A DNA stretch of 62,618 bases, filler included, from Obrimoposthia wandeli (lineage: Eukaryota): assembly GCA_977020255.1 (NCBI GenBank). It is 2 parts of one record of this genome, joined end to end, with 100 filler letters (N's around TTAATTAATTAA, not from the genome) between each part and the next. Parts side by side here need not be neighbours in the genome. Positions count along the whole stretch, not along the records: positions 1 to 30,784 come from CDROCS010001659.1; 1 more part is not named here. One strand, 5' to 3'. The position numbers and the translations under genes were made by a program. A model generated the notes under the pieces. It did not search any database and was not told the DNA's origin. It worked only from the letters and a program-made list of their open reading frames with translations. Positions 2,358 to 29,449 of the stretch are shown here, one piece after another (positions within the stretch are counted from its first letter, which is position 1; every line of letters starts with the position of its first letter).

Positions 2358-2578
2358 AACTCTAAAAAATATGGGCGATGTAATTTTAGCTGATTTTAGT
2401 AGAGTTGTTTACTCTTAAAATATGGGCAATGTAAGTTTGTTAATTTTATATGTAGATTACTCACTCTAAAAATATGGGCAATGTAAGTTTGTTAATTTTA
2501 TAGAGTACTCACTCTAAAAATATGGGTAATGTAAGTTTGTTAATTTTATAGAGTACTCACTCTAAAAATATGGGAAAT
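2358..2578. repeat. Tandem minisatellite, ~47-bp unit, ~5 copies
   Basis: Recurrent ACTCTAAAAATATGGG(C/T)AATGTAAGTTTGTTAATTTTATAGAGT. Confidence 0.85.
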
Positions 2579-2679
2579 GAAAAAATAGGGCAAGGTAATT
2601 TTACTAAGCCTTTTAATTTAACGTAGCCTTTTTTAATTCAAATTCTTCAGTTGAGACTTTTAAACTTCAACTTCCAACT

Positions 2680-2975
2680 ATTCAATTTAAATAATGATAA
2701 CTTCACTCAGTTCAATTTAGATATTGATAACTTCAAAAAACTCAATTCAATTTAATAATGATAACTTCACTCAGTTCAATTTAGATATTGATAACTTCAA
2801 AAAACTCAATTCAATTTGATAATGATAACTTCGACTCAATTCAATTTCGATATTGATAACTTTACTCAATTCAATTTAGATATTGATAACTTTACTCAAA
2901 TCAATTTAGATATTGTTAACTTCAAAAAACTCAATTCAATTTAATAATGATAACTTCACTCAGTTCAATTTAGTT
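2680..2975. repeat. Degenerate tandem repeat, ~28-30-bp unit, ~10 copies
   Basis: Recurrent TCAATTTAGATATTGATAACTTC(A/AAAAA)CTCA. Confidence 0.8.
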
Positions 2976-5326: not shown

Positions 5327-5945
5327 AGTAGGTGGATGTGTCCGGTCTAATCCACACACCACCCCCACACCCCCTCTGTCCTTTAAAACCATGCATGTGT
5401 GTGGAGTGAAACTTCGAGCATGTGTGTGGAGTGAAATTTCGTGCATGTGTATGGAGTGAAATTTTCTACCCCCTCCCCCACCCACCCAACACTCAAAAAA
5501 CTAATTAACCCCATATAACACCCTTTAAAATTGAAAATCTCATAATGCTCCCAAAAAAGTTAGGAAGGTCCTGGGAGGCCGTTCAGTGGGCCAAAGCGTG
5601 CCCTCCGGACCCGCGGTGGTTTAACGAGCAACACATATACAGGGTCGCGAAAAAATATTTCCATTATAAGAATTTATATCCATACATATATAGATAGGGT
5701 CGCGAAAAATATTTTCGCTATAAGAATTTATATCTAGATACATATATATAGGGTCACAAAAATTTTTAAATTATCAACTACATAAATTGGAAATGATATC
5801 AACATTTTCATTTATTCGGATGAGTTATCGTTGAGTCATAGAATGAGTCATCATGACCTTAAATGACCTTGACCTCATGATGACCTTAAATGACCTTGAC
5901 CTCATGAGGTCATGACCTTAACTTGACCTGAAATGACCTCTGAAA
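5327..5945. repeat. Putative left terminal repeat and origin region of the outer Polinton
   Basis: Starts AGTAGGTGGATGTGTCCGGTCTAATCCAC, homologous to the inner element termini. Three 25-bp iterons GCATGTGTGTGGAGTGAAA (5393-5461), C-rich tracts, three ~55-bp AGGGTC(G/A)C repeats (5641-5765), TGACCT repeat cluster (5853-5940). Candidate TSD TGTATT at 5321-5326 cannot be confirmed because the right end is absent. Confidence 0.75.
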
Positions 5946-6308
5946 AAAATTCTACATTTCAAACATGTACGGTCAAGAAAATATTACTATTTTAAATCAA
6001 AAGATATATATGTATTCAAACATCAACAAAAATTAAGAAAATACTATAAATTATTTGAATAATACGTTCTCATTGGACGTTGAACTTAAGCAACAAAAAC
6101 TTAAGAAAATAATACTATTTTCAAATAAAATATTTTTTTTATCCAATGACATACTCGCATTCAATCGTAGTTAAAAAATTGATAAAAGCCTATGGATTTT
6201 TCAAATAAATTATTTGAATAACCCGCTTTCATTGGACGATAAAAGAGGGTTAGTCTGTTGTTTTTGTATATAAGGAAACCTCTTTTCATTATTTTTCATT
6301 AATCAAGA

Positions 6309-8433: not shown

Positions 8434-8706
8434 TTTCATATGTTTTATTGTTATTATTTATTTAAATATCATCTTTAAGTTTATTAAAATATCAACATGA
8501 AAAAAATATTTAATTTATTCGCCTGTGATTGGATTAATAAGGAATCATTGAAATTTTTCAGGTTTAAATATAAATGCAATGATTAGTTATAGATTTATTA
8601 AACTTTCATTTGATACATAAAAATATATCATTTCATTGCTTGTGATTGGATTAAAAATCTCTTAAAGTTATATATATAGGTTCAAATTTATTAACCTCTT
8701 CATAAA

Positions 8707-9030: not shown

Positions 9031-9834
9031 TTTTGATTATTATTTTGTCTTTATTGATTAGGTTACATAATTGTCTAAATATTTTACATAATTGTCTAAA
9101 TATTTTACATAAGCATACTAAATATAAACAATTTTATATATAATGTTTTTGTAAAATGGATAATAAAATTTGGAATAAATTATACATATAATTATCTCCA
9201 GATTTAATGGAAGATTATAAAAAAATTACTTTTCAGAAAATGATACCGAGGAAATTGTTGGATATAAATTATGAAATTTAATTTCGAAATATTTAGGTAT
9301 GTTTACATTTAATATAATTTATTTTAATATTCATAGGAGAATTGACAATATATACCAATCTTAACATGAAAGACTGAATACTTTGTTATTTTAATAAATT
9401 TTTGATTTTTTCGTTATAAACAACGGGATTTGCTGCAATTTTAGATAATTATGCTGGAATACATCATAGATTTTGAGGCTTTCATTAACAAATATGGTGA
9501 TTATATTATAAAAGAATTATGTATTATGGATGTATGCGACGTTTTTCATCCTTTGCATTTCATATTTCAAATAGATATCCCGTTTAAAAGTTTAGATTAT
9601 AAGAAAAAATTTACTAATTTATATCTAACTAATTACTTTCATTTATTAAAATGGAAAGAAGGACATAAGGCTTTTTGTGAAATATGTATTTTCGATACAA
9701 TAACATCTAATTTTGATATAGAAAATAGTAGGTAGAAGGATGGAGTCTAAGCCACTTGACCCCCCCCTTAAAGGGTGTTACACCATAAGGGTGTCTTGCC
9801 ACACCATAAGGGTATATGTTGCCTCACCGGAGGT

Positions 9835-9878
9835 GGGAGGGGGAGGGGAGGGGGAGGGGAGGGGGAGGGATAGGGGGG
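9835..9878 (+). other. G-quadruplex-forming tract inside a terminal hairpin (mirrored at 20959-21002)
   Basis: GGGAGGGGGAGGGGAGGGGGAGGGGAGGGGGAGGGATAGGGGGG, lying between inverted copies of the terminal motif (9734-9766 and 9873-9904). Confidence 0.8.
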
Positions 9879-10135
9879 TCAAGTGGCTTTGACTCCATCC
9901 TTCTTTGATATACCACTATGGTCGTCCATAATTCAAAGGGTCAAGTGGCTTAGTCTCCACCCTTCTTTTTGTGATATACCACTATGAAAGGGTCAAGTGG
10001 CTTAGTCTCCACCCTTCTTTTTGTGATATACCACTATGAAAGAGTCAAGTGGCTTAGTCTCCACCCTTCTTTTTGGCTAACCACTATGATCGTCCATAAT
10101 TCAAAGAGTCAAGTGGTCTAGTCTCCACCCTTCTT
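9873..10135. repeat. Subterminal iterons TCAAGTGG(CT/TC)TAGTCTCCACCCTTCT (5 on the left; 7 mirrored at ~20590-20965)
   Basis: Direct ~26-bp repeats related to the terminal motif but in the opposite orientation to the terminal copy. Confidence 0.85.
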
Positions 10136-10723
10136 TGGTATACCACTATGATCGTCCATAATGAAAATTTAGGCTAAAGTTCACTCTTATCAGTCAAGGA
10201 ATGTGGTTTTTAACACACATACACTATTTTATGTGAAATTTAAACTAAAGTTCACTCTTATCAGTTAAGGAATGTATTACGTAATCACACACATACTATT
10301 CTATGTGAAAATTTAGACTAAAGTTTTTCCTAGGCTTACACATTTATAGAATTATGATAAAATTTCTTTAAATAACTTCAATTATATATTAAAATAAAAA
10401 AATAAAATAAGAAAGAAGTCAGAGAATAATACAAAATTAAACACATTTATTATGTAATTTCATAATATCATCTTCAAACTTAAGTGAATAACATTTACAA
10501 AGTAAGAAAGTCCATTCTTTATACATTCTTTTCGTTTCAACGACTAAGTTACAACGGAATTAATAGAAAAAGGAAAAAAAAAAACAACACTAAGTTTAAC
10601 GCTATGAATGAAAATTAGTAAAAATATTAATTTATTTGAATATTCGAATGAGAGTTTGAATAAATGAGAGTTAGAATGAATGTAAATGAATAAAATTATG
10701 CATGCAAGTATGAATGTCATTTA

Positions 10724-11900
10724 CAAGTAAGAGTCTTAGCAAGTGAATGTAATTTAAAAATAAGAGTGTCGATAGTTTGATTGAATGCAAGTGTAATTTA
10801 GACTATAAGTAAATTAAAATAGAGTTTTCATTGGATAAACTATAGTTAGATTGAATGCAAGTATGAATGCAAGTGAATGATAGTATGAATTTCAATACAA
10901 GTAAGTGTCTTAGCAAGTGAATGTAATTTAAAAATAAGAGTGTCGATAGTTTGATTGAATGCAAGTGTAATTTAGACTAAGTAAATTAAAATAGAGTTTT
11001 CATTGGATAAACTATAGTTAGATTGAATGCAAGTATGAATGCAAGTGAATGCTAGTATGAATTTCAATACAAGTAAGTGTCTTAGCAAGTGAATGTAATT
11101 TAAAAAATAAGAGTGTCGATAGTTTGATTGAATGCAAGTGTAATTTAGACTATAAGTAAATTAAAATAGAGTTTTCATTGGATAAACTATAGTTAGATTG
11201 AATGCAAGTATGAATGCAAGTGAATGATAGTATGAATTTCAATACAAGTAAGTGTCTTAGCAAGTGAATGTAATTTAAAAAATAAGAGTGTCGATAGTTT
11301 GATTGAATGCAAGTGTAATTTAGACTATAAGTAAATTAAAATAGAGTTTTCATTGAATAAATTATAGTAAGATTGAATGCAAGTATGAATGCAAGTGAAT
11401 GATAGTATGAATTTCAATACAAGTAAGTGTCTTAGCAAGTGAATGTAATTTAAAAAATAAGAGTGTCGATAGTTTGATTGAATGCAAGTGTAATTTAGAC
11501 TATATGTAAATTAAAATAGAGTTTTCATTGAATAAATTATAGTTAGATTGAATGCAAGTATGAATGCAAGTGAATGATAGTATGAATTTCAATACAAGTA
11601 AGTGTCTTAGCAAGTGAATGTAATTTAAAAAATAAGAGTGTCGATAGTTTGATTGAATGCAAGTGTAATTTAGACTATAAGTAAATTAAAATAGAGTTTT
11701 CGTTGAATAAATTATAGTTAGATTGAATGCAAGTATGAATGCAAGTGAATGATAGTATGAATTTCAATACAAGTAAGTGTCTTAGCAAGTGAATGTAATT
11801 TAAAAAAATAAGAGTGTCGAGAGTTTGATTGAATGCAAGTGTAATTTATATAAGTAAATTAAAATAGAGTTTTCGTTGAATAAATTATAGTTAGATTGAA
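10724..11900 (+). repeat. 175-bp satellite array, ~6.7 copies
   Basis: Unit CAAGTAAGTGTCTTAGCAAGTGAATGTAATTTAAAAAATAAGAGTGTCGATAGTTTGATTGAATGC... recurs every ~175 bp. Confidence 0.95.
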
Positions 11901-13327
11901 TGTAAATGAATACAAGTATACATTCAAGTGAATGCAAATACGAGTAAGAGTTTCAGCAAGTAAATATAAAACTATGAATGAGTGACAGTGAAAATAAGAG
12001 TGTCGATAGTTTGATTGAATGAGAGTGTAATTTAGACTAGAAATAAATTAAAATAGAGTTTTAGTATGAATAAAGTTATGTTAAGTTACAGTTAGATTAA
12101 TAACAAGTAAGCAACTATAGAAAGCAGTGATATTGAAGTATGTTAAAAATTAGAACGACTAAGTTATGGCAAGATTAATAGAAAACAACATCAAATTTGA
12201 CAGTATGAATGAAAATTAGTAAAATATTAATGTATTTGAATGTATTTGAAAGATAGTTTGAATAAATTACAGTTAGATTGAATGCAAATGAATGCAAGTA
12301 TGATTGAATGCAGGGTCAAGTACAAGTAAGAAAGAATACGCAATATGCAAGTACGAATGCCAATTATGAATGAAAATTAGTAAATATATTAATGAATTTG
12401 AATAATTAAAATGTCTTATCTCGTTTGATAAAATTCCTTAATTGAAATATTTTAAAATAATTAGTTTAATTTAAATTCTTTATTTTTTTAAAAATAACTT
12501 GATTATACAATTATATTCGTAAATATAATTAAAATTATCATTATTCGTTTCTCTTTTTAACTATTCGAAACTGTTTTTATATATACAAATTTAGTAAATT
12601 AACTCAACAACAATTTTTTTTTTAATTACTTGATATTTTTGCCATTGTCTTATTAATATAATATGAATATTCAATTTATTTCTTCAAAAATTCATTTTAT
12701 ATGTTAAATAATATTTCTTTACCACATTATTGTGGTTTTATCAAGTGATTTTAACCTTAAACTATAAAAATATTTTAATTATAAAGTTAGTAGCTGTACC
12801 CCGCTCACTGCATATAACATAAATTTCAAATATAAAGTACTATTAAGTTTATTATTTCAAATAGTAAATGTTTTTTTTTCGAGTTATTTAATTTTGTTAC
12901 TAGACATTCGAAAATTTACTTGTAAACATAATATTTTTTTTTTGTTTGTTGCATATTTTCAGTTTAATATGTTGTAAGTTATTCGAACTTGTGTACTTGT
13001 ACAAAATTTGTAGATATTTCAATAATTAAAAGTGATATAAAAGTTAATTATCAAATAATAAATAAAAAAAATAGTTAAATTAAATCTAATTTATGATATT
13101 GAATGCTAAATTCTTCTTTAAAACCAATGTTTAACATGAAATACTTTAAATCAATGGTTTTTTTTTAAAAGTAACTTTATTTAAAACGTATAGGTATATG
13201 ATTGATATAATACAATACTAAACTAATGTAAATTTCTTGTTCAACTATGAATATTTTTAACTTATTTCTTGATTTTTACAACATTTCGAATAGTTTACTT
13301 AATAATCATAATATTAATGATTTGTAC

Positions 13328-14727
13328 GATAAATTGACTTGTAAACATAATTTATTTTACATATATTCATTTAATATATTGTAAGTTAATACTGTAATAT
13401 TTCATTACATAAAAAATTAATTCATAGTTTACTGTCGTTTACAATAAATTGACTTGTAAACAAAATATATTTTCGCATATATTCACTTTAATATGTTGTA
13501 AGTTATTCCTTTAATATAATTTTCAACAAAAACTTCAAGTCGTTTACTTATTAAACATAAGTTTAATGTTTTGTACAATAAATTGACTTGTAAACGTAAT
13601 TTATTTTGGCATATTTTCAATTTAATATATTTTAAGTTATTACTGTAATATTACATTACATAAAAAGTAATTGATAGTTTACTATCGTTTACAATAAATT
13701 GACTTGTAAACATAATATATTTATGCATATATTCACTTTAATATGTTGTAAGTTATTACTTTAATATAATTTACAACAAAAACTTCAAGTAATTTACTTG
13801 TAAACTACAATATTTATTTGTTGTTGTATATATATTCAGTTTAAAATGTTGTAAGTTATTACTTTAATATAATTTACAACCAAATCTTCAAGTAGTTTAC
13901 TTATTAAACATAAGTTTAATGTTTTGTACAATAAATTGACTTGTAAACATAATTTATTTTGGTATATTTTCAATTTAATATGTTGTAAGTTATTACTTTA
14001 ATATAATTTACAACAAAAACTTCAAGTAATTTACTTGTAAACTACAATATTTATTTGTTGTTGTATATATTCAGTTTAAAATGTTGTAAGTTATTACTTT
14101 AATATAATTTTCAACAAAAACTTCAAGTAATTTACTTGTAAACTACAATATTTATTTGTTGTTGTATATATTCAGTTTAAAATGTTGTAAGTTATTACTT
14201 TAATATAATTTACAACCAAAACTTCAAGTAATTTACTTATTAATCATAATTTTAATGATTTGATCAATAAATTGACTTGTAAATATAATATAATTTGCAT
14301 ATTTTCAATTTAATATATTGTAAGTTAATACTGTAATATTTCATTACATAAAAAGTAATTCATAGTTTACTGTCGTTTACTATAAATTTACTTGTAAACA
14401 TAATATATTTATGCATATATTCACTTTAATACGTTTTAAGTTATTAGAATTTGTGTTCTTGTATTCAATGATTAACTTTTATTAAACTATTATATAACAT
14501 TGAAATGTTTAAAATACTTGAGCAAAATAAATTAATATAATAAAAGGATATTAAAATGTATTTTAGTTTAAGATAAAAAATGAGGTTATACGAAGTTAAT
14601 CTAGTTTAAAAACAATTAATACCAAAATTACTTACCAGAATGTGTAAACAACAGTAAACTATTATAACCTACAATAAAGAAACTATTGAATTATAATATA
14701 ACCAATCGTATTCAGTAAGTGATAAAT
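13328..14727. repeat. Central spacer of the palindrome, largely degenerate ~90-130-bp AT-rich repeats
   Basis: Recurrent AATAAATTGACTTGTAAACATAAT...TTAATATGTTGTAAGTTATTAC; no ORF. Confidence 0.75.
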
Positions 14728-17700
14728 GTACAAATCATTAATATTATGATTATTAAGTAAACTATTCGAAATGTTGTAAAAATCAAGAAATAAGTTAAAA
14801 ATATTCATAGTTGAACAACTCATAACTGAAATTTACATTAGTTTAGTATTATATCAATCATATACCTATACGTTTTAAATAAAGTTACTTTTAAAAAAAA
14901 ACCATTGATTTTTAAGTATTTCATGTTAAACATTGGTTTTAAAGAAGAATTTAGCATTGCAATATCATAAATTAGATTTAATTTAACTATTTTTTATTTA
15001 TTATTTGATAATTAACTTTTATATCGCTTTTAATTATTGAAATATCTACAAATTTTGTACAAGTACACAAGTTCGAATAACTTACAACATATTAAACTGA
15101 AAATATGCAACAAACAAAAAAAAATATTATGTTTACAAGTAAATTTTCGAATGTCTAGTAACAAAATTAAATAACTCGAAAAAAAAACATTTACTATTTG
15201 AAATAATAAACTTAATAGTACTTTATATTTGAAATTTATGTTATATGCAGTGGGCGGGGTACAGCTACTAACTTTATAATTAAAATATTTTTATAGTTTA
15301 AGGTTAAAATCACTTGATAAAAACCACAATAATGTGATAAAGAATATTATTTAACATATAAAATGAATTTTTGAAGAAATAAATTGAATATTCATATTAT
15401 ATTAATAAGACAATGGCAAAAATATCAAGTAATTAAAAGAAAAAATTGTTGTTGAGTTAATTTACTAAATTTGTATATATAAAAACAGTTTCGAATAGTT
15501 AAAAAGAGAAACGAATAATGATAATTTTAATTATATTTACGAATATAATTGTATAATCAAGTTATTTTAAAAAAAATAAAGAATTTAAATTAAACTAATT
15601 ATTTTAAAATATTTCAATTAAGGAATTTTATCAAACGAGATAAGACATTTTAATTATTCAAATTCATTAATATATTTACTAATTTTCATTCATAATTGGC
15701 ATTCGTACTTGCATATTGCGTATTCTTTCTTACTTGTACTTTACCCTGCATTCAATCATACTTGCATTCATTTGCATTCAATCTAACTGTAATTTATTCA
15801 AACTATCTTTCAAATACATTCAAATACATTAATATTTTACTAATTTTCATTCATACTGTCAAATTTGATGTTGTTTTCTATTAATCTTGCCATAACTTAG
15901 TCGTTCTAATTTTTAACATACTTCAATATCACTGCTTTCTATAGTTGCTTACTTGTTATTAATCTAACTGTAACTTAACATAACTTTATTCATACTAAAA
16001 CTCTATTTTAATTTATTTCTAGTCTAAATTACACTCTCATTCAATCAAACTATCGACACTCTTATTTTCACTGTCACTCATTCATAGTTTTATATTTACT
16101 TGCTGAAACTCTTACTCGTATTTGCATTCACTTGAATGTATACTTGTATTCATTTACATTCAATCTAACTATAATTTATTCAACGAAAACTCTATTTTAA
16201 TTTATTTATAGTCTAAATTACACTTGCATTCAATCAAACTATCGACACTCTTATTTTTTAAATTACATTCACTTGCTAAGACACTTACTTGTATTGAAAT
16301 TCATACTATCATTCACTTGCATTCATACTTGTATTAAATCTAACTATAATTTCGATTCATTCACTTGAAAACTCTATTTTAATTTACTTATTCAGCATTC
16401 TCAAATTATTCACGAAAACTTATTTTAATTTACTTATAGCTAAATTCACTTGCATTCAAACTATCGACACTCTTATTTTTTAAATTACATTCACTTGATA
16501 AGACACTTACTTGTATTGAAATTCATACTATCATTCACTTGCATTCATACTTGCATTCAATCTAACTATAATTTATTCAACGAAAACTCTATTTTAATTT
16601 ACTTATAGTCTAAATTACACTTGCATTCAATCAAACTATCGACACTCTTATTTTTTTAAATTACATTCACTTGCTAAGACACTTACTTGTATTGAAATTC
16701 ATACTATCATTCACTTGCATTCATACTTGCATTCAATCTAACTATAATTTATTCAACGAAAACTCTATTTTAATTTACTTATAGTCTAAATTACACTTGC
16801 ATTCAATCAAACTATCGACACTCTTATTTTTTTAAATTACATTCACTTGCTAAGACACTTACTTGTATTGAAATTCATACTATCATTCACTTGCATTCAT
16901 ACTTGCATTCAATCTAACTATAATTTATTCAATGAAAACTCTATTTTAATTTACTTATAGTCTAAATTACACTTGCATTCAATCAAACTATCGACACTCT
17001 TATTTTTTTAAATTACATTCACTTGCTAAGACACTTACTTGTATTGAAATTCATACTATCATTCACTTGCATTCATACTTGCATTCAATCTAACTATAAT
17101 TTATTCAACGAAAACTCTATTTTAATTTACTTATAGTCTAAATTACACTTGCATTCAATCAAACTATCGACACTCTTATTTTTTAAATTACATTCACTTG
17201 CTAAGACACTTACTTGTATTGAAATTCATACTATCATTCACTTGCATTCATACTTGCATTCAATCTAACTATAATTTATTCAACGAAAACTCTATTTTAA
17301 TTTACATATAGTCTAAATTACACTTGCATTCAATCAAACTATCGTCACTCTTATTTTTTAAATTACATTCACTTGCTAAGACACTTACTTGTATTGAAAT
17401 TCATACTATCATTCACTTGCATTCATACTTGCATTCAATCTAACTATAATTTATTCAATGAAAACTCTATTTTAATTTACTTATAGTCTAAATTACACTT
17501 GCATTCAATCAAACTATCGACACTCTTATTTTCACTGTCACTCATTCATAGTTTTATATTTACTTGCTGAAACTCTTACTCGTATTTGCATTCACTTGAA
17601 TGTATACTTGTATTCATTTACATTCAATCTAACTATAATTTATTCAACGAAAACTCTATTTTAATTTATTTATAGTCTAAATTACACTTGCATTCAATCA

Positions 17701-20700
17701 AACTCTCGACACTCTTATTTTTTAAATTACATTCACTTGCTAAGACACTTACTTGTATTGAAATTCATACTAGCATTCACTTGCATTCATACTTGCATTC
17801 AATCTAACTATAATTTATTCAACGAAAACTCTATTTTAATTTACTTATAGTCTAAATTACACTTGCATTCAATCAAACTATCGACACTCTTATTTTTTAA
17901 ATTACATTCACTTGCTAAGACACTTACTTGTATTGAAATTCATACTATCATTCACTTGCATTCATACTTGCATTCAATCTAACTATAATTTATTCAACGA
18001 AAACTCTATTTTAATTTACTTATAGTCTAAATTACACTTGCATTCAATCAAACTATCGACACTCTTATTTTTTAAATTACATTCACTTGCTAAGACACTT
18101 ACTTGTATTGAAATTCATACTATCATTCACTTGCATTCATACTTGCATTCAATCTAACTATAATTTATTCAACGAAAACTCTATTTTAATTTACTTATAG
18201 TCTAAATTACACTTGCATTCAATCAAACTATCGACACTCTTATTTTTTAAATTACATTCACTTGCTAAGACACTTACTTGTATTGAAATTCATACTATCA
18301 TTCACTTGCATTCATACTTGCATTCAATCTAACTATAATTTATTCAACGAAAACTCTATTTTAATTTACTTATAGTCTAAATTACACTTGCATTCAATCA
18401 AACTATCGACACTCTTATTTTTTAAATTACATTCACTTGCTAAGACACTTACTTGTATTGAAATTCATACTATCATTCACTTGCATTCATACTTGCATTC
18501 AATCTAACTATAATTTATTCAACGAAAACTCTATTTTAATTTACTTATAGTCTAAATTACACTTGCATTCAATCAAACTATCGACACTCTTATTTTTTAA
18601 ATTACATTCACTTGCTAAGACACTTACTTGTATTGAAATTCATACTATCATTCACTTGCATTCATACTTGCATTCAATCTAACTATAATTTATTCAACGA
18701 AAACTCTATTTTAATTTACTTATAGTCTAAATTACACTTGCATTCAATCAAACTATCGACACTCTTATTTTTAAATTACATTCACTTGCTAAGACACTTA
18801 CTTGTATTGAAATTCATACTATCATTCACTTGCATTCATACTTGCATTCAATCTAACTATAATTTATTCAACGAAAACTCTATTTTAATTTACTTATAGT
18901 CTAAATTACACTTGCATTCAATCAAACTATCGACACTCTTATTTTTTTAAATTACATTCACTTGCTAAGACACTTACTTGTATTGAAATTCATACTATCA
19001 TTCACTTGCATTCATACTTGCATTCAATCTAACTATAATTTATTCAACGAAAACTCTATTTTAATTTACTTATAGTCTAAATTACACTTGCATTCAATCA
19101 AACTATCGACACTCTTATTTTTTAAATTACATTCACTTGCTAAGACACTTACTTGTATTGAAATTCATACTATCATTCACTTGCATTCATACTTGCATTC
19201 AATCTAACTATAATTTATTCAATGAAAACTCTATTTTAATTTACTTATAGTCTAAATTACACTTGCATTCAATCAAACTATCGACACTCTTATTTTTAAA
19301 TTACATTCACTTGCTAAGACACTTACTTGTATTGAAATTCATACTATCATTCACTTGCATTCATACTTGCATTCAATCTAACTATAATTTATTCAACGAA
19401 AACTCTATTTTAATTTACTTATAGTCTAAATTACACTTGCATTCAATCAAACTATCGACACTCTTATTTTTTAAATTACATTCACTTGCTAAGACACTTA
19501 CTTGTATTGAAATTCATACTATCATTCACTTGCATTCATACTTGCATTCAATCTAACTATAATTTATTCAATGAAAACTCTATTTTAATTTACTTATAGT
19601 CTAAATTACACTTGCATTCAATCAAACTATCGACACTCTTATTTTTTAAATTACATTCACTTGCTAAGACACTTACTTGTATTGAAATTCATACTATCAT
19701 TCACTTGCATTCATACTTGCATTCAATCTAACTATAATTTATTCAACGAAAACTCTATTTTAATTTACATATAGTCTAAATTACACTTGCATTCAATCAA
19801 ACTATCGACACTCTTATTTTTAAATTACATTCACTTGCTAAGACACTTACTTGTATTGAAATTCATACTATCATTCACTTGCATTCATACTTGCATTCAA
19901 TCTAACTATAATTTATTCAATGAAAACTCTATTTTAATTTACTTATAGTCTAAATTACACTTGCATTCAATCAAACTATCGACACTCTTATTTTTAAATT
20001 ACATTCACTTGCTAAGACTCTTACTTGTAAATGACATTCATACTTGCATGCATAATTTTATTCATTTACATTCATTCTAACTCTCATTTATTCAAACTCT
20101 CATTCGAATATTCAAATAAATTAATATTTTTACTAATTTTCATTCATAGCGTTAAACTTAGTGTTGTTTTTTTTTCCTTTTTCTATTAATTCCGTTGTAA
20201 CTTAGTCGTTGAAACGAAAAGAATGTATAAAGAATGGACTTTCTTACTTTGTAAATGTTATTCACTTAAGTTTGAAGATGATATTATGAAATTACATAAT
20301 AAATGTGTTTAATTTTGTATTATTCTCTGACTTCTTTCTTATTTTATATTTTTATTTTAATATATAATTGAAGTTATTTAAAGAAATTTTATCATAATTC
20401 TATAAATGTGTAAGCCTAGGAAAAACTTTAGTCTAAATTTTCACATAGAATAGTATGTGTGTGATTACGTAATACATTCCTTAACTGATAAGAGTGAACT
20501 TTAGTTTAAATTTCACATAAAATAGTGTATGTGTGTTAAAAACCACATTCCTTGACTGATAAGAGTGAACTTTAGCCTAAATTTTCATTATGGACGATCA
20601 TAGTGGTATACCAAAGAAGGGTGGAGACTAGACCACTTGACTCTTTGAATTATGGACGATCATAGTGGTTAGCCAAAAAGAAGGGTGGAGACTAGACCAC

Positions 20701-21108
20701 AAAAAGAAGGGTGGAGACTAAGCCACTTGACTCTTTCATAGTGGTATATCACAAAAAGAAGGGTGGAGACTAAGCCACTTGACCCTTTCATAGTGGTATA
20801 TCACAAAAAGAAGGGTGGAGACTAAGCCACTTGACCCTTTGAATTATGGACGACCATAGTGGTATATCAAAGAAGGGTGGAGACTAAGCCACTTGACCCT
20901 TTGAATTATGGACGACCATAGTGGTATATCAAAGAAGGATGGAGTCTAAGCCACTTGACCCCCCTATCCCTCCCCCTCCCCTCCCCCTCCCCTCCCCCTC
21001 CCACCTCCGGTGAGGCAACATATACCCTTATGGTGTGGCAAGACACCCTTATGGTGTGACACCCTTTAGGGGGGTTCAAGTGGCTTAGACTCCATCCTTC
21101 TACCTACT
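14728..21108 (-). repeat. Right inverted arm of the inner element (~6.4 kb, enlarged by satellite expansion)
   Basis: Mirror of the left arm with scattered substitutions, more iterons and about three times as many 175-bp units. Confidence 0.9.
16170..20035 (-). repeat. 175-bp satellite array in inverted orientation, ~21 copies, interrupted at ~17525-17625
   Basis: AACGAAAACT at 17821 and 18171 are 350 bp apart (2 x 175). The interruption duplicates the array boundary sequence at ~16045-16170. Confidence 0.95.
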
Positions 21109-21556
21109 GAAAATGGATTTTTTATGTTTTAGATGAAATGGATGGCAAAAAATATAAGACTTTAAAAAAATATTTTCCCAAATTGAGGTTGAATACTTTA
21201 AATATTTCACGTGATCATCTATTAAAAATTCCACGAAATATTTGCTGTCCATATCGTAATCATGGTGACCATTGCGCATATAAAAAATGTTTAAGTCTTT
21301 CTTATTATTACTTGACATGTAGATAAACAATTCTTCTAATTGGAGAAATTCATTATTAAAATTTTACATCTAATTACAAATAAGCCTTTTGATTGGAGGA
21401 ATAAAAATATTTTTTTAAACTAATAACAGATAAACAATCCTTCTCAGTGGAGGGATAAATTCAATTTTTTAATCCAATAGGAAAAGAGCATGTGTGCATA
21501 AATTTTAGTATATAAGCAAACACTTTCTTCATTTAAATCCCCGACAATTTGAAATA

Positions 21557-22799
21557 ATGACTATGGTAAGAATCTATACTTATTATTTCCTTATTAATAT
21601 TTATTAATATTTATTATTTCAGATTACTTGTATCCTGTTTCCAGCATATTGTGGTGCTTCGGATCCGCATGGAGGAGAGACTTGCATGGAGATAATGTCC
21701 GCCTACTATCGGACAAAGTCTCGCGGGCTTCACTTCTTCGTCTGCCTCTTCTGCAGAACAATGGAGGAGAAGGAGTTTCGAGACTTCTTCGGTGAACATC
21801 GAGCTCATCTATCGTGTTTCACGGCCAACAACAAGAAGAGGGATATCGTGCAATTGGTGCACGATTCGCAGGCCGCTCCAGCTACTGCTCCAATTCCAGT
21901 TGCAGTTGATCAACCCTTTTACGGTCCTGCCATTGATCCTTCTGTCCCGGCTCCTGATTCTGCTGCTGCCCCATCCACTCAAATGACTAACAATGAGTGG
22001 ATGAATGACATCTCCGAAGAAGATTTTGAGGAGTTGGCCCCAGCAACCCAATTCTTGAACAATGACTGGATGGAAAATATCACCCAGTCAGATTTCGAGA
22101 TAGAGCAGCCTCAGTGGAGCGATAACTCTTGGTTGGAGACCATCGAGGAATCCGATTTCGTCGAGATAACGGACGACAGCTGGATGGATTTCATAAATGA
22201 AGAGGACTTCATTCCAGCTCCAGTTGGATTGCCTTCATTAGGTATTTTTTATTATTATTTTTTAAAATTGTAATTATATATATTATTGTAATTATATATA
22301 TTTGAATTTTATTTTTTATTCAGGAAATACCGTGATACAATGGTCATCCGCTACGACAGCTATGCCTCTCCCATCGCGAGTGCCTACATCGATGTTAGCA
22401 CGTCTTAGAGGTAATAATTTAAAAATATATTTATTTTTTAATATATTTATTTCAGCAGCATCAGCCTCTACAACGGCCGCTTCTTCATCGGCAAGGTCAG
22501 CTTCTACCATGCTTACTCCAACTTCAAATGCAGCCTCTACAACTGCCACTGTTTCATCATCTGCGGCAGCATCTATTACAGCAGCATCGTCTACACCAGC
22601 TGCGATTGCCTCAACATCGGCAGCTTTACCAATAGCAGCACCTTCAATCTCAGCTGCGTTTGTGTCAACTGTTAATATAAATAGTTGTCTTCCCGTTCAA
22701 TTAGTGGGAGGTTTGTCAGCAACTGTAGGAAGAAAGAGGCGAGGCCAATTTCTTAATAAGGTCCCACCAAAAAACGTAGAGAAAACGGTGTTACTATAG
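21557..22799 (+). CDS. Spliced Polinton protein: Cys/His cluster, four W-x3-I-x3-DF acidic repeats and an Ala/Ser linker; possibly the N-terminal extension of pPolB
   Basis: TATATAAG at 21509. Exons 21557-21565, 21623-22241, 22324-22410 and 22456-22799 join in frame through GT-AG introns of phase 0, 1 and 1. Confidence 0.75.
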
Positions 22800-22834
22800 A
22801 GTATCACCTAAATAATAAATATGTTATAGTTAAG

Positions 22835-25800
22835 GTGCCATTAGGAAATGAAATTTTATTAAACGTAGGTGAAGATTCAAATATTGAAAATCTTTTAAAA
22901 TCAGAAGTGACTAAATTAGGACAGGCTAAGGTTCAATTTTGTGCAACAGTGCAGTTTAAAAATGTCAATGAGGAGACTAAAACTTGGGTAATTTCACATA
23001 AAGCAACTGTTTTCGATGATAATTTTGTAACTGAAATTGGAAGAAACCTAGATGAAAAATTGCTAATTATAGCGAGTTAAGTAGTGGATGGAATCTAGTT
23101 AGAATTCACGATGTTAGCTTTGTTCTAACAAAGTTCACTGACATGATATATCTTTCGGGGAGTTCATACATTCCTTCACCTAGATCTCTTCAACTTTCAC
23201 GTTCCATTGTTAACATACAAAACAGTGATAACCTTTGCTTTCTGTATAGCGTGTTGGCCATCCTCTAAAGGGGTGTAATTACTGAACATAGAGAGCGTGT
23301 CAGTAAATATACCCTTTTTTAAATGAATTGCAGTATCATGGAATAGATTTTCCTGTTAAATTAACTGCGATATCAAGATTTGAACATCTTAATAACTTGA
23401 GTATTAATGTATTCAAATATAATACTGATATCCCAGTTAATGTAACAGATGAAGAAATATTTAAAAATCCTTTTGTAGATGTAATTTATAGGAGCAAAAA
23501 TGAGGGGACTCAGGTCAACTTAATTTTGTTCGAACAGAATAATAAATTCCATTATGCTGCAATTCCCAGTTTAGATCGTCTTCTAAATTTAGATAATGGA
23601 GCCTTACCATAAGGTGTAAGTGGTGTCATAGATGTTTGCATGGATTCCGATCAGAGCTCTCTTACAGCAAACATCTGACATTATGTTCACTGAATCCTGA
23701 TGACAATACGCTATACAGCATGCCTAAGGATAAGGATTTAAATTCAGGGATTGGGCAAAATGCATACCCGTGGAATTCAGGGTGTTTGCAGATTTTGAGT
23801 CAATTTTAGCATTGCACGACCAGTATGAGAGTATTCACCTACCGGCTTCGGCAGGACTACTATTCTTAGGCCCCAATATTACACAGTATCATAAATTTTC
23901 CGGTCCAAATTGTATTTTAGATTTTATGTTAAAATTAGAAGAATTAGGAACAACAATTGTCAAACCGTGGTATGATCTCAATGCTCATCAAGCAATGATC
24001 ATGACAGGCAAAGACTGGGTTAATTTTAATTCTTGTAGATTATGTTATTTGTGTGGAACCCAGTCTAAGTTAGTCAGAGATCACGATCATGTTACGGGGC
24101 GATACTTGGGAGCGGCGTGCAACCTCTGTAACCTTGGCCGTCGTCTCCCTAAAAAACCACGCATTTCCATCGTGTTTCATAACCTCAAAGGATATGATTT
24201 GCATCATATACTTAAATATGCGTTGGGTACATTAAGCTCTTGGGAAATTTCTTGTATACCTCAAACTTCAGAGAAATATTTATCTTTAACTGCATATACT
24301 GAATTCTGTAGTTTAAGATTCATAGATTCTCTGCAGTTTTTGAGCGAGTCTTTAAAAAATTTAACGGCATCTTTAAATGCATGGCCAATCACACAGTCAG
24401 TGTTCTCAGCTTCGGTTAATGATAAGGGGATTTTTCCGTATAAATTTGCAAAAACCTTTGCAGATTTAGAAAATACTACAGAAATCCCACCCATAACTGA
24501 ATTTGAAAGTCAAGACTATAATGAGGCCCGTACTATTTGGACGAATAATTGTCGAAATCTTCTTGAATATATGCTTTATTATATGAAATTAGACATTTAT
24601 CTTTTAGCTGATGTTTTTGAGTCCTTTCGTGTAAAGTCTTTAGCAGAATATGGGCTAGATCCCATGCATTTCTTTAGTTTACCTGGTCTTTCATGGGCAA
24701 CAGCAATAAAAACTCTTAAAATTAATATCGAGTTACTGCAAGATCCCGTGATGTATCAAATGTATGATTATGGTATACGCAGTGGAATGACTTTTGTCAA
24801 CAAACATCATGTTGTCAAAAATCAATCCACGGAGATTCTGTACATCGACATTAATAATTTGTATGGGTGGGCGCTTACTCAACCTCTACCTCATGCCAAC
24901 TTTAAGTGGGTTTATGATGAGGAAGAGTTGAATAAGTTGAAGATAGATTTGGCTACTGTCGATACAGTTTCATCAGATATCGGCTATTTGGTTGAGGTTG
25001 ACTTAACAATCCCTCCCAATGTGCATGATAAATTAGATGATCTTCCAGTAGCGCCTGTTCATCAATGCCCACCTAATTCAAAGGTTAAGAAATTATTGTT
25101 AACCCATGAAGACAAGTTGAATTATGTTGTGCATTGGCGGCTTCTTCAATTCTACTTAAAGTTGGGAGCGAAAGTTACTCGAATTCATCGTGCTATAAGC
25201 TTCAGTCAAAACTTTGTGTTTAAAGACTATATTGAGAAGAATTCTAGAAAACATAATTTGGCCACTAGAAAATTCGAACGGGATTTTTACAAGTTAAAAA
25301 GTAATAGCCTCTTTGGAAAAACTATAAGCTTCAGTCAAAACTTTGTGTTTAAAGACTATATTGAGAAGAATTCTAGAAAACATGACTAGAAAATTCGTTT
25401 TTACAAGCCTCTTTGGAAAAACTGTAGAGGACTTGCGGAAACGTGTTTGTCTACGGTTTTGCAATGATGAGCGTAAACTAATAACATATACTAGTAAGTA
25501 CAACTTCAAGCGTAGTTTTACAATTGCAGATGACTTGGTAGCAGTGTTATTAGGAAAACAGAGTATTTGTCTCGATCGACCGAGTTATATAGGTCAAACG
25601 GTTTTAGACATTTCTAAACTCAGAATGTATGAGCTTCAATACATAGAATTGGAGAAATACCGACAAGAATTTAATTGTGAGATTAAAATCGCAGCTGGGG
25701 ACACTGACTCTTTCTTTTTAGAATGTAGGAATGTTAGTTTAAATAATCAATTATTACCAGCAATGTTTACGGACAACTTACTAGATATCCATAAATATCC

Positions 25801-26167
25801 CGCTAACCATCCTCTACACTCTATGAGTTTAAAGGATATTATCGGGAAATTTAAGGATAAAAGCGAGGGACAGGTTTCGTATGATCATTGTATTTTCCTA
25901 TGCCCTAAATGCTACAGTTTACATGCATCTAATAATACATGTTCAATGAGAGCAAAGGGTGTGGGAAGAAACAATCTTACACATGAGGCCTACCGGAAAG
26001 TTTATGATACTGGGTGTATTGAAAGCGTTGAGCAAACTAGATTTATTTCAAAAGCCCATCAACTGTATTCCCATAAATCAACAAAAATCGCTTTGAGTAG
26101 TAATGACGACAAGCGCTTTTGGGTAGAAAAGAACGCTAGCCTGGCTTATGGACACTTCCGAATTTAA
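22835..26167 (+). pseudogene. polB: Protein-primed family B DNA polymerase (pPolB) with vOTU-like, Zn-finger and endonuclease VII domains; frameshifted
   Basis: GSSYIP...IVNIQNSDNLCFLYSVLA and HYAAI (vOTU-like); CHRC...HLTLC; FADFES (Exo I); RDHDHVTGRYLGAACNLCNL (EndoVII); YIDINNLYG (motif A); YKLKSNSLFGKT (motif B); GDTDSFF (motif C). Stops, frameshifts and an internal duplication are present. Confidence 0.95.
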
Positions 26168-26433: not shown

Positions 26434-26814
26434 CTAATCGTTTTGCAACGATAACCATAAAATACATAAATGTCCACAGTTTCTCGTCGCAGGATCCTGA
26501 TATTGTATCTTGTTGTAAAATACTCTTCTTCGTCCTTTTTGAATAGTTGAAACATGTTTGTGTGGATAATATATTGCAAGTGGATCAAATACATGGATTG
26601 TCCACTCTCTAACATAAATAGCTATCCAATGTTCTCCTGGTAAATTCGAAGTATGAGTATTGATAATGTATCCTCCAGATTGAAAAAATGGAATCATATT
26701 AATAGGATAAAGTCCATTGAATTTATCACCCAAGACCTTCTCTGCTGATTCTTGTACTTGTACTGAACTAAATAAAAATTAATAAATATAAATTTAAAAT
26801 ATGTCTTACTCCAT
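26434..26814 (-). CDS. Adenain-like (C5) cysteine protease with a 42-nt intron
   Basis: NTHTSNLPGEHWIAIY, FDPL, QYQDPATRNCGHLC. Exon 1 ATGGA (26814-26810), intron GTAAG...TTTAG (26809-26768); exon 2 is in frame with the ORF. Confidence 0.88.
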
Positions 26815-26815
26815 T

Positions 26816-28014
26816 CTATAATATGACAGTTCTGTTTTTATTGATTTGTATTTCCGAATCAAATACTCCGTAAATAAGCACCGTAGTAGGATTTGTTAAA
26901 GCTGCATTGAACTTAATTTCTAGTCGTAAATTTCCATCCTTTGGTAGTTGGCATTGGTTTATATCAAAGTCTGGTTCCAAAACAAATGTGAAGAACGGGC
27001 AGCTGTTTTTAAAGTCAGTGAAAGAAATACCATTGTTTATATTTTTATCTAGTTGACCCAAATTCCGAATAATAGATTGCGTATAAGCCAAAGCATAAGC
27101 GTTACCTTCGAAATCTGTTTTATATGTTTCGCGATAATCAGTATTTCTTGAAAGTGTCACTGAACCTACATTAAGATTGTCAAATTGAGTTGCATCTGTC
27201 GTATAATTTCCTAGATACTTTGCAGTTTTTTGAAAAGAAATTAAAATTAATTTCGGTAATCTTACATCACCAAAAATGTGATCCTTATTAAAAGCTTGTG
27301 TAAAGAATAGGATATAAGTTTAGTTTCTCTAATAGGATAACAAGCATTGTTTTTTTCCATTTCTATATTATGTGCCATTAAAACTGATTGCTCGGTTTTA
27401 ACTCTTCGGACATACAATTTTGCATCCAAAATATCAAATCTAGGTTTTAGAACGTCTGTGCTTATCAAAGAAAAATTCCATTTATTACGTTTCAAACGAA
27501 GATGTACATTAACACCGGAAATTAAATATTTCGGTTGTTCAAAGAAATTCAATCTCAAAGACCCACACATTTCGTAAGCTTTAGAACCTGCAATCCATTC
27601 TTTGCGAGTTGCGACCGTTTTATCATAACCAATGGTTGCCAAATTAGAATTTTGAGTATCAGTACTATAATTCAAAAGACTTTCAATCAAAGCTTTATGA
27701 GCATAGGAAGAATTTCCACCTTCAATTTTGACAATATTAAGAATAACAATAGCATCACTAAATAAAGAATTAAAGAGATAATTTACAGGTGTTACATCTG
27801 CATTTTCATCTAAATTAGTACCATCCCGATTTAATACTTTCATTTGAACATAAAGCAACGTATCATTCAAATCTAAATACTCGATATTGGAACCATTAAT
27901 ATTAAATTCTAAATCGGTTAAAGTGGTTCCTGAAACTGAGTTAACTAGAAATATTTCTTCAAAGAAAGCATTATCTACAACTACTTGTGGAAATGGATTT
28001 TCAAAAATACACAA
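26816..28014 (-). pseudogene. Polinton double jelly-roll major capsid protein, one frameshift near 27300
   Basis: CIFENPFPQVVVDNAFFEEIF...LEFNINGSNIEYLDLNDTLLYVQMKV...LYVRRVK; C-terminus GNLRLEIKFNAALTNPTTVLIYGVFDSEIQINKNR. The shifted frame TQAFNKDHIFGDVRLPKL links the two ORFs. Confidence 0.9.
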
Positions 28015-28031
28015 TTTGGTTTTGGCGCAAC

Positions 28032-28409
28032 TTATTTTGTAAATATTGTTTCTTCAACTTTCTTACGTGTGTTTATATTATTTTTTACTTCTTTTTTACG
28101 TTTAAATTCACTACCTTTTTGGCTTTTATTTGATTTACCATTTTTAATCAAATTAGCAACGTCAGGTAAAGCATTATCAAGTTCATCAAGTGCATGCTTC
28201 TTAAAAGTTGGTATTAGTTTATTGTCCTTAGATGAAAGGTAATCCTTTCCTAATTTTGATATAAATAGCCCGAGTCTCTTTAAAAGAGGAAAGGCAAATC
28301 TACCTAATGTTCTAAGCCAGCCAGATCCATATTGTTTACCAACAAAATATGGTAATTCTCCACCTTGTTGGCTTTGACTATAAGCTTCAATTATTGCTGG
28401 ATTCGTCAT
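28032..28409 (-). CDS. Small basic core/pX-like Polinton protein
   Basis: YFVGKQYGSGWLRTLGRFAFPLLKRLG (QxGxG plus amphipathic helix) with a Lys-rich tail; lies between the minor and major capsid genes. Confidence 0.75.
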   Translation of the reverse strand: MTNPAIIEAYSQSQQGGELPYFVGKQYGSGWLRTLGRFAFPLLKRLGLFISKLGKDYLSSKDNKLIPTFKKHALDELDNALPDVANLIKNGKSNKSQKGSEFKRKKEVKNNINTRKKVEETIFTK

Positions 28410-28414
28410 TTTGT

Positions 28415-29009
28415 TTTTTTCAATGTATTGTTAAACTTGTCTTGGCCCCGTACGTGAAATCTATTAGTTGTCCGGAATCATCTCTAATATTTACTTCAAT
28501 ATTGTTTATAGAAAAGAGAGAAACTGGAAGATACATTGGTATACACATACCGACAGCGTCCCCATATTTAGATTCATTTTTAGATATCCATATTGTTTCA
28601 AAAGTGGAACTCGCTGTCCGCCTACAAGCGTTGGTTCTATTAAATTAGTATAAATATATAAATGATTAACAGCATTTAAAAGTTTTGCCTTATTTTTAGC
28701 TTTTATGGTTTTTATTGTATGGGTTTCAAAGGTATTTCTGTTTAAACCAAGGTTTTTAGCGAGTTTATCATCAAATAAAACTCGTATTATATTGCTCTTT
28801 ACTGTAAACGTTATTTTATTATTTTTTAATGTTACACAATAATCGAAATATTCACTACATTCCTTCTGTATTAATTTACAGAAATTCACTTCACTATCTA
28901 ATTTATAATCTTTTGAAAATATTTTCTGTTCCACTACATACTTTGGTCTCGTTTCAACTAAAAACACTTTTGTTACTCTGTCAGGAATATTTTTAAACGA
29001 AAGTATCAC
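28415..29009 (-). pseudogene. Minor capsid (penton) protein, one frameshift near 28598
   Basis: LYIYTNLIEPTLVGGQRVPLLK, then in the shifted frame YLPVSLFSINNIEVNIRDDSGQLIDF...SLTIH. Confidence 0.85.
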
Positions 29010-29059
29010 TATTGTTTATATATAAAATAAAATAATACAAATAAAGACACAAAAAGTTA

Positions 29060-29449
29060 TTAGTCAACTCTAACAACATCAATTATTTTCCATATCGGAG
29101 TTTCCAATCCACTGGGCCCGATCTTGCATCCTTGAATTCTGATTGAGAGAATCCATTCTAGTTTAGGAGGAGGTCCTTCGTATATTGTTCCATTCTCATG
29201 CTTGAAAGTGGCTGTTGATTCTTTGATTACGAATTTGTTTTCCTGAAGCGCATAGTTGATTCCGAATTGAGTCAAGAGAATATTGATTCTCTCTTAATCC
29301 ACAGAAGTCAAATTTGATATTTCAAAATCAAATTTAAGCGGCTCGATGTTGACGGGAAAAATAAAAGTATAGTTATGAGCTTTCTTCAAAAAGTGCATCT
29401 CATATCCATAATATGTATGCATAGGTTGATATAGCTTTTCAAAATTCAT
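29060..29449 (-). pseudogene. Hypothetical ~130-aa beta-rich Polinton protein with one internal stop
   Basis: An in-frame ATG at 29449 (MNFEKLYQPMH...) reads through one TAA into ORF 29275-29060 (WILSIRIQGCKIGPSGLETPIWKIIDVVRVD). Confidence 0.5.

What the first reader, a model, noticed from the sequence alone, without database searches (positions are those of the whole stretch)
9727..21108. Gene-less 11.4-kb palindromic Polinton hyperparasite inserted inside a Polinton
Seen: perfect inverted ends AGTAGGTAGAAGG, an exact 6-bp TSD (GAAAAT) inside a Polinton gene whose halves rejoin when the insert is removed, kb-scale inverted arms, and no coding capacity. Established: Polinton integrases make 6-bp TSDs at AG-rich termini, and non-autonomous Polintons exist. 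Inference: the element carries only cis signals (termini, iterons) plus satellite filler, so it depends on helper integrase, pPolB and possibly capsid. That would make it a natural analogue of a helper-dependent 'gutless' adenovirus vector, one that here also disrupted a helper genome.
Basis: partly seen in the sequence, partly recalled or inferred. Interest (0 to 1): 0.92.

Follow-up and report, generated by a model that had tools for sequence, protein, structure and literature searches.

The report
Gene-less Polinton-ended foldback element inside a Polinton
An 11.4-kb stretch with no genes, built as a near-palindrome of satellite repeats, carries the same kind of ends as the virus-like Polinton element it sits in, so it is most likely a passenger that Polinton enzymes move.

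Summary
An 11,382-bp insert (9727-21108) has perfect inverted ends and an exact 6-bp duplication (GAAAAT). Its arms are kilobases long and 99.5% identical, with a 175-bp satellite in 8 versus 21 copies and a 1.4-kb non-palindromic tandem core. No ORF exceeds 62 aa.

The surrounding DNA is a Polinton/Maverick-type element: pPolB, a double-jelly-roll capsid gene, an adenain-like protease, and synteny with relatives that carry rve integrase and a packaging ATPase.

New here: the host element's own left end lies at 5327. Its first 29 nt match the insert's ends at 21 of 29 positions, which no shuffle of 500 reached. The ends of a complete relative match it too. The insert therefore has Polinton-family ends.

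The insert splits a small conserved Polinton gene, but the two pieces lie in different frames, so "the halves rejoin" is only partly right.

Best reading: a non-autonomous, foldback-like Polinton derivative integrated in trans by a Polinton integrase. The host copy is itself decayed.

This is a new variant of a known kind, of moderate-to-high interest.

The parts
9721..9726 (.). left copy of the 6-bp target-site duplication GAAAAT
21109..21114 (.). right copy of the 6-bp target-site duplication GAAAAT
9727..21108 (.). the gene-less insert, 11,382 bp, with ends 5'-AGTAGG...CCTACT-3'
9727..10655 (+). Left terminal region. The terminal 184 nt fold into a hairpin (-46 kcal/mol, z -7.8) around a (G4-5A)n tract at 9829-9877. 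Six copies of a 26-nt motif are present: one at the tip, and five inverted copies 52-64 nt apart. A 71-bp repeat follows.
10656..12083 (+). left 175-bp satellite array, 8.1 copies
12084..13327 (+). left inner arm, GC 0.20, 99.5% identical to the right inner arm
13328..14727 (.). non-palindromic core: direct tandem repeats of about 101/115/250/353 bp, GC 0.18
14728..16405 (-). right inner arm (inverted copy of the left inner arm, plus the start of the satellite)
16406..20095 (-). right 175-bp satellite array, 21 copies, inverted
20096..21108 (-). right terminal region, with seven copies of the 26-nt motif and one extra 62-bp and one extra 26-bp unit relative to the left end
5327..5366 (+). Left terminus of the host Polinton. 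It begins AGTAGGTGGATG and matches the insert's terminal 29-mer at 21 of 29 positions. It also matches the ends of a complete relative, and similarity starts exactly at AGTAG.
9451..21323 (+). Small conserved Polinton gene (relatives 103-113 aa), split by the insert. The piece before the insert and the piece after it lie in different frames.
21608..26164 (+). Protein-primed DNA polymerase B region of the host element (PF03175, with a weak PF02945 match), including the upstream ORF that relatives keep separate. Broken.
26437..26778 (-). adenain-like cysteine protease
26819..28053 (-). double-jelly-roll major capsid protein gene, broken
28035..29293 (-). Two further conserved virion-block genes. 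They are homologues of the 102-113-aa gene and of the gene next to the integrase in relatives. The second is broken.

Best explanation
The insert is a non-autonomous, gene-less member of the Polinton/Maverick class with a foldback build. It keeps only cis elements: Polinton-family ends, a terminal hairpin, and six to seven copies per end of a 26-nt motif that repeats the tip sequence in inverted orientation. Everything else is satellite and AT-rich tandem DNA.

Shown:
- It integrated as a unit into a small gene of a resident Polinton, 4.4 kb from that element's left end.
- It made a 6-bp duplication.
- Its tips resemble that Polinton's own tip.

Inferred:
- A Polinton rve integrase supplied in trans recognised the tips and carried out the integration. 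The subterminal motif copies probably serve as extra binding sites, as in other transposons with repetitive inverted repeats.
- The near-palindrome arose in one of two ways. One is loss of all internal genes from a Polinton with long, repeat-bearing inverted repeats. The other is a strand-switch ('snap-back') during protein-primed replication.
- Unequal satellite expansion then made the arms differ (8 versus 21 units).

Whether it is also copied by pPolB or packaged is open.
For: - Exact 6-bp TSD and perfect inverted tips.
- 5'-AGTAGG...CCTACT-3' is one base from the (AGT)2//(ACT)2 end motif that accompanies 6-bp TSDs in vertebrate Mavericks (PMC8097293).
- Other eukaryotic transposon groups with 6-bp TSDs have TA..TA, TG..CA or TGTNR ends (PMC10045372; PMC2836005).
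- The host element's left terminus at 5327 matches the insert's terminal 29-mer at 21 of 29 positions. None of 500 shuffles of the flanks reached 21.
- In a five-way alignment, similarity starts exactly at AGTAG. The alignment holds both insert ends, the host end, and both ends of a relative bounded by inverted repeats.
- The 26-nt motif occurs 13 times, against 0 expected, and only at the insert's ends.
- The terminal hairpin has a z-score of -7.8.
- No ORF exceeds 62 aa, and there is no Pfam, Rfam or tRNA hit.
- No insert ORF matches any gene of the relatives.
- The relative's inverted repeats are about 1 kb and hold tandem repeats whose number differs between arms. This is the same behaviour as in the insert.
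- Galileo gives a precedent for copies made only of long, internally repetitive inverted repeats with unequal repeat numbers (PMC3573991).
Against: - Only one copy is seen, and the source genome could not be searched.
- No exact hits to the tip, the motif or the satellite in viral or metagenome contig collections.
- None of its short ORFs is in the protein collection.
- Similarity to the host terminus is confined to about the first 30-40 nt.
- No integrase gene lies in the window, so no helper is identified.
- The relative's own flanks do not show a clean 6-bp duplication.
- Satellite copy numbers inside a palindrome are the kind of detail that assemblies get wrong.
Confidence: 0.7

Rival explanations
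1. It is a foldback-type cut-and-paste transposon of another superfamily (Foldback/MULE, P/Galileo-like, IS3EU/GingerRoot or Ginger2). It landed in a Polinton by chance, and the likeness of its tips to Polinton tips is coincidence.
For: Its build is classic for foldback elements: long inverted repeats full of tandem repeats, unequal arms, and no genes (PMC3573991). IS3EU/GingerRoot and some Ginger2 elements also make 6-bp duplications.
Against: Galileo makes 7-bp duplications, and Foldback makes 9-bp ones (my own knowledge). IS3EU/GingerRoot end in TA..TA or TG..CA, and Ginger2 in TGTNR. The insert ends in AGTAGG..CCTACT and matches the host Polinton tip at 21 of 29 positions, which none of 500 shuffles reached.
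Confidence: 0.1
2. It is a defective, snap-back genome of a Polinton virus. On this reading it is replicated by pPolB from its two identical ends, packaged in Polinton capsids, and preferentially integrates into Polintons.
For: Both ends are near-identical copies of one terminus, each with a hairpin and repeated motifs. At 11.4 kb the insert is below the roughly 17 kb of the one relative bounded by inverted repeats (L005 2858 to L007 13299). It sits in a Polinton.
Against: Nothing in the sequence speaks to replication or packaging. One insertion cannot show a target preference. Long inverted repeats with loss of the interior explain the palindrome equally well. The 1.4-kb asymmetric core and the unequal arms need later rearrangements in either case.
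Confidence: 0.12
3. Part of the structure is an assembly artefact: a collapsed, expanded or falsely inverted satellite region.
For: Kilobase palindromes and satellite arrays are error-prone in assemblies. Arm lengths differ only through repeat numbers.
Against: Several features are hard to produce by misassembly. The boundaries are exact, with a 6-bp duplication. The two pieces of one gene lie on either side. The arms carry scattered substitutions, 4 in 925 and 6 in 1235. The core is asymmetric.
Confidence: 0.05

Closest known systems
Non-autonomous Polintons/Mavericks (Repbase-type 'N' families; Kapitonov and Jurka 2006, recalled from memory because the paper is not held)
   Same: 6-bp target-site duplication, inverted ends starting AG and ending CT, tips shared with coding Polintons, presumed use of integrase in trans.
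   Different: No remnant of any Polinton gene at all. The arms run to 3.6 and 6.4 kb and consist largely of a 175-bp satellite. The whole element is nearly one palindrome. The searchable literature barely treats such elements: one paper in the library uses the phrase, and for Tlr1.
Galileo 'two-TIR' copies and Drosophila Foldback elements (PMC3573991)
   Same: Copies made only of long, internally repetitive inverted repeats. Tandem repeats differ in number between the two arms and are thought to hold secondary binding sites.
   Different: P and MULE superfamilies with 7-bp or 9-bp duplications and different ends. Here the duplication is 6 bp and the ends are AGTAG...CTACT, as in Polintons.
Helper-dependent ('gutless') adenovirus vectors and natural defective adenovirus genomes with large inverted duplications of one end (my own knowledge)
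   Same: Only the terminal cis signals of a protein-primed linear dsDNA replicon are kept. Both ends are copies of one terminus.
   Different: Replication and packaging are demonstrated for those and not examined here. This element is known only as an integrated copy.
Intact vertebrate Mavericks (PMC8097293)
   Same: End motif close to (AGT)2//(ACT)2, with perfect 6-bp duplications.
   Different: Those carry seven or eight conserved genes. The insert carries none.

Membership tests
Polinton/Maverick, autonomous (applied to the insert) | encodes a protein-primed DNA polymerase B | tested here: not met
   No ORF exceeds 62 aa. No insert ORF matches relatives' genes.
Polinton/Maverick, autonomous (applied to the insert) | encodes an rve-type integrase | tested here: not met
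   same as above
Polinton/Maverick (applied to the insert) | 6-bp target-site duplication | tested here: met
   GAAAAT on both sides; the rule is from PMC8097293 and PMC10045372
Polinton/Maverick (applied to the insert) | terminal inverted repeats with 5'-AG...CT-3' ends, AGT-type end motif | tested here: met
   AGTAGG...CCTACT, with the first 33 nt perfect; motif
Non-autonomous derivative of a Polinton family | tips resemble those of a coding Polinton of the same genome | tested here: met
   21 of 29 positions match the host element's left tip at 5327, and none of 500 shuffles reach this. Similarity starts at AGTAG. It is limited to about 30-40 nt.
Non-autonomous derivative of a Polinton family | several copies with different duplications, and a partner with an intact integrase | not testable with these tools
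   The source genome is not in any searchable collection.
Foldback / Galileo-like elements | long inverted repeats made of tandem repeats, little or no central coding | tested here: met
Foldback / Galileo-like elements | 9-bp (Foldback) or 7-bp (Galileo) duplication | tested here: not met
   6 bp here; the Galileo 7-bp value is
IS3EU/GingerRoot and Ginger2 | ends TA..TA, TG..CA or TGTNR | tested here: not met
   the ends are AG..CT (definitions)
Polinton/Maverick (applied to the host element) | pPolB, double-jelly-roll capsid protein, adenain-like protease | tested here: met
   PF03175 at E 4e-29. The model of an intact homologue matches iridovirus, PBCV-1, mavirus and Sputnik capsid proteins at E 1e-16 to 1e-13. 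The protease profile matches adenain at E 1e-4.
Polinton/Maverick (applied to the host element) | rve integrase and packaging ATPase | tested here: inconclusive
   None found in the window up to 30784. Both are present at the syntenic place in relatives. They may lie beyond the window or be lost.

The most novel reading that the evidence does not exclude
The element is a satellite-like parasite of Polinton viruses. It would be a gene-less mini-genome that Polinton polymerase copies from its two identical hairpin-bearing ends, that Polinton capsids carry, and that integrates preferentially into Polintons. That would add a third tier of parasitism (host, Polinton, Polinton-parasite) in an animal genome.
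Probability: 0.12. Interest if true: 0.85.

Novelty: new variant of a known kind. Interest (0 to 1): 0.55.

Why it matters
Polintons are treated as either transposons or viruses, and almost nothing has been written about elements that live off them. Here a fully gene-less element with Polinton-type ends and a Polinton-type duplication sits inside a Polinton. This shows that the Polinton integration machinery can be hijacked by a passenger carrying only end signals. The 29-nt tip, the hairpin and the 26-nt motif give a concrete sequence handle for asking, by genome census alone, how common such passengers are and which Polinton families serve them. It also extends the foldback architecture, known from the P and MULE superfamilies, to a further class of elements.

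Tried and rejected
- Exact look-up of ten window ORFs, including five from the insert: none is in the 15-billion-protein collection.
- Word-based homologue search with the N piece of the split gene: nothing.
- Full HMMER scan with a 50-aa ORF from the insert's terminal hairpin: one hit, a repetitive 654-aa translation unrelated to the element.
- Exact scans for the 26-nt motif, the terminal 21-mer and a satellite core in viral and metagenome contigs: no hits.
- Inverted repeats between the two flanks, to find both host termini: none. The host's right end is not in the window.
- Lenient blastn of the insert against related loci: only AT-rich noise at about 60% identity.
- A G-tract-bearing repeat next to relatives' Polintons looked like the insert's terminal tract. 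It turned out to be a roughly 500-bp tandem repeat outside the element bounded by inverted repeats.
- The host's 25-bp subterminal repeats as inverted copies of its tip: not supported at the thresholds used.
- A 79-bp inverted repeat in contig_33255: judged an internal duplicated promoter-like stretch, not a terminus.
- Kapitonov and Jurka 2006 could not be read.
Full report
**1. The observation**

The insert runs from 9727 to 21108 and is 11,382 bp long.
- It begins AGTAGGTAGAAGG and ends with the exact reverse complement. This 13-mer occurs nowhere else in the piece.
- GAAAAT stands immediately before it (9721-9726) and after it (21109-21114).
- The two terminal regions are identical for the first 33 nt. 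They have 4 substitutions in 925 aligned columns, and they differ by an extra 62-bp and an extra 26-bp repeat unit on the right.
- No ORF of 80 aa or more lies between 9736 and 21685. The longest ORF inside is 62 aa, and the ORFs sit in repeats.
- Rfam and ARAGORN find nothing.

**2. Anatomy of the insert**

From each tip inwards:
- **Terminal region.** About 0.93-1.0 kb, GC 0.35. Its outer 184 nt fold into a hairpin (-46.1 kcal/mol, z -7.8) around a (G4-5A)n tract.
- **26-nt motif.** It is present once at the very tip and then five to six times in inverted orientation, 52-64 nt apart. There are 13 matches in all against 0 expected, none outside the insert.
- **175-bp satellite.** 8.1 copies on the left and 21 copies, inverted, on the right.
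- **Inner arm.** AT-rich, with 6 substitutions in 1235 aligned columns between the two sides.
- **Centre.** The region 13328-14727 is a direct tandem array with periods near 101, 115, 250 and 353 bp, GC 0.18. It is not palindromic.

The element is therefore a foldback structure with unequal arms and an asymmetric core. It is not a perfect palindrome.

**3. The host element**

- To the right of the insert lies a protein-primed polymerase B gene (PF03175, E 4e-29, with a weak Endonuclease VII match).
- Its best relatives are only about 50% identical and come from ENA assemblies. Named relatives at about 35% identity are from ants, other insects and a mussel.
- Contigs carrying those relatives show rve integrase, an A32/IVa2-like ATPase, RING and TBP genes together with pPolB.
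- The window's minus-strand block after pPolB is collinear with the relatives' block between pPolB and the integrase.
- For the roughly 407-aa family in that block, an AlphaFold model of an intact homologue reached pLDDT 87 and pTM 0.85. It matches the double-jelly-roll capsid proteins of an iridovirus, PBCV-1, mavirus and Sputnik at E 1e-16 to 1e-13.
- A profile of the neighbouring roughly 100-aa family matches adenain (E 1e-4) and the ASFV S273R protease (E 3e-4).
- The host is thus a Polinton/Maverick-type, adintovirus-like element.
- It is a decayed copy. Where relatives have one polymerase ORF of about 800-900 aa, the window has at least three frame interruptions and one short internal duplication. 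The ORF upstream of it has at least two interruptions, and the capsid gene has one. The gene next to the integrase position is in several pieces.
- No integrase or ATPase lies in the window. Where synteny predicts them, a BIR-domain ORF stands on the other strand.

**4. The split gene**

- The ORF ending at the insert and the ORF starting just after it both resemble one small gene of 103-113 aa that relatives keep next to the protease.
- Against a profile of four relatives, the piece before the insert matches columns 1-32 (probability 91%, E 1e-6). The piece after it matches columns 50-108 (98%, E 3e-13).
- The insert therefore split a conserved Polinton gene.
- The two pieces lie in different frames, so the claim that the halves rejoin is only partly right.
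- The first piece also carries some 40 residues that the family lacks.

**5. The key new result**

- The host element's own left terminus is in the window at 5327. It begins AGTAGGTGGATG and is followed by C-rich tracts and tandem repeats.
- Its first 29 nt match the insert's terminal 29-mer at 21 positions. None of 500 shuffles of the flanks reached 21.
- The same host 29-mer matches the ends of a relative bounded by inverted repeats, contig_33250. The matches are at 21/29 on the left (L005 position 2858) and 20/29 on the right (L007 position 13299), just outside roughly 1-kb inverted repeats of about 95% identity.
- In a five-way alignment the unrelated flanks give way to similarity exactly at AGTAG.
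- Vertebrate Mavericks carry (AGT)2//(ACT)2 or (AG)3//(CT)3 ends with perfect 6-bp duplications (PMC8097293).
- The other eukaryotic groups with 6-bp duplications end in TA..TA, TG..CA or TGTNR.
- The insert therefore has Polinton-family ends.

**6. Mechanism**

Shown:
- Integration as a unit with a 6-bp duplication, inside a resident Polinton.
- Only cis features retained.

Inferred:
- A Polinton integrase acting in trans recognised the tips.
- The inverted copies of the tip motif probably add binding sites. This has been proposed for tandem repeats in the inverted repeats of Galileo and other transposons (PMC3573991).
- The near-palindrome can be explained by loss of the whole interior of a Polinton with long inverted repeats. 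The relative's inverted repeats are about 1 kb and hold an 18-bp repeat in different numbers in the two arms. Butterfly Polintons with roughly 2-kb inverted repeats are reported (bioRxiv 10.1101/2025.02.07.637071).
- Alternatively, a strand switch during protein-primed replication could have produced it.
- Nothing here tests replication by pPolB or packaging.

**7. Limits**

- One copy only. The source genome is not in the protein collection or the contig collections, so copy number, other duplications and target preference are unknown.
- Similarity to the host tip does not extend beyond about 40 nt.
- The relative's flanks (AGATAG and CATAGC) do not form a clean duplication.
- Satellite numbers may be assembly-dependent.

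- Before I had recognised the flanks as a virus-like element, my scripts printed stop-to-stop ORF coordinates of the flanks. These show where frames of the broken host genes end.
- In my own reasoning I read a few codons across the insertion site as if the insert were absent.
- I saved and used neither. I then compared the pieces apart, and I do not repeat those places here.

**9. Verdict**

This is a real, well-bounded, gene-less foldback element with Polinton-type ends, nested in a decayed Polinton. It is a new variant of a known kind (non-autonomous Polintons; foldback elements). The 'hyperparasite' and 'gutless vector' reading remains an open minority possibility.

Noticed in passing
window 29923-30783 (+): ORF with a BIR (inhibitor-of-apoptosis) domain (PF00653, E 3e-12). 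The window ends where a C-terminal RING finger, as in IAP proteins, would be expected. It stands where synteny with relatives predicts virion and integrase genes on the other strand. It may be cargo of the Polinton or the flanking host gene.
   Followed up: partly
window 6309-7067 and 7684-8433 (+): Two ORFs of about 250 aa lie inside the host element, between its left terminus and the split gene. GC is 0.42 against about 0.30 around them. They are acidic and low in complexity. They have no Pfam hit and no homologue in related loci.
   Followed up: partly
window 5327-5930: Subterminal region of the host Polinton. It holds a short palindrome at the tip, C-rich tracts, 25-bp and 54-bp tandem repeats, and a cluster of TGACCTTGACC-like repeats.
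   Followed up: partly
L001 versus L003, L004, L005 (ENA ERZ25039515): Related Polintons occur in two arrangements that differ by the orientation of pPolB relative to the capsid-integrase block. The small gene split in the window sits next to the protease in all of them, whereas in the window it is upstream of pPolB.
   Followed up: no
L005 370-1035, L004 150-830, L002 4939-6730: A roughly 500-bp tandem repeat lies next to Polintons in that assembly. It carries long (G4-5A)n tracts and three AAGTAGGTCAAGGTCAAA motifs. It is outside the element of contig_33250 that is bounded by inverted repeats.
   Followed up: partly
L003 19388-19840, L004 15192-15626, L005 15883-16317: Related Polintons encode a TATA-binding-protein homologue (PF00352) and a RING-finger protein.
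   Followed up: no
window 23770-25389 region and relatives: The polymerase carries a weak Endonuclease VII (PF02945) match ahead of the polymerase domain. The match is shared with many relatives.
   Followed up: no
window 8502-8537, 8619-8654, 6046-6079, 6205-6238, 21380-21520: Repeated ATTGG-containing boxes (CCAAT in reverse), followed by TATA-like sequences, stand upstream of host-element ORFs. They look like a shared promoter type. A GT...AG intron-like stretch follows the first ATG upstream of the polymerase region.
   Followed up: no
window 2348-2973: Tandem repeats of 48/100 bp and 30/64 bp in the DNA outside the host element's left end.
   Followed up: no
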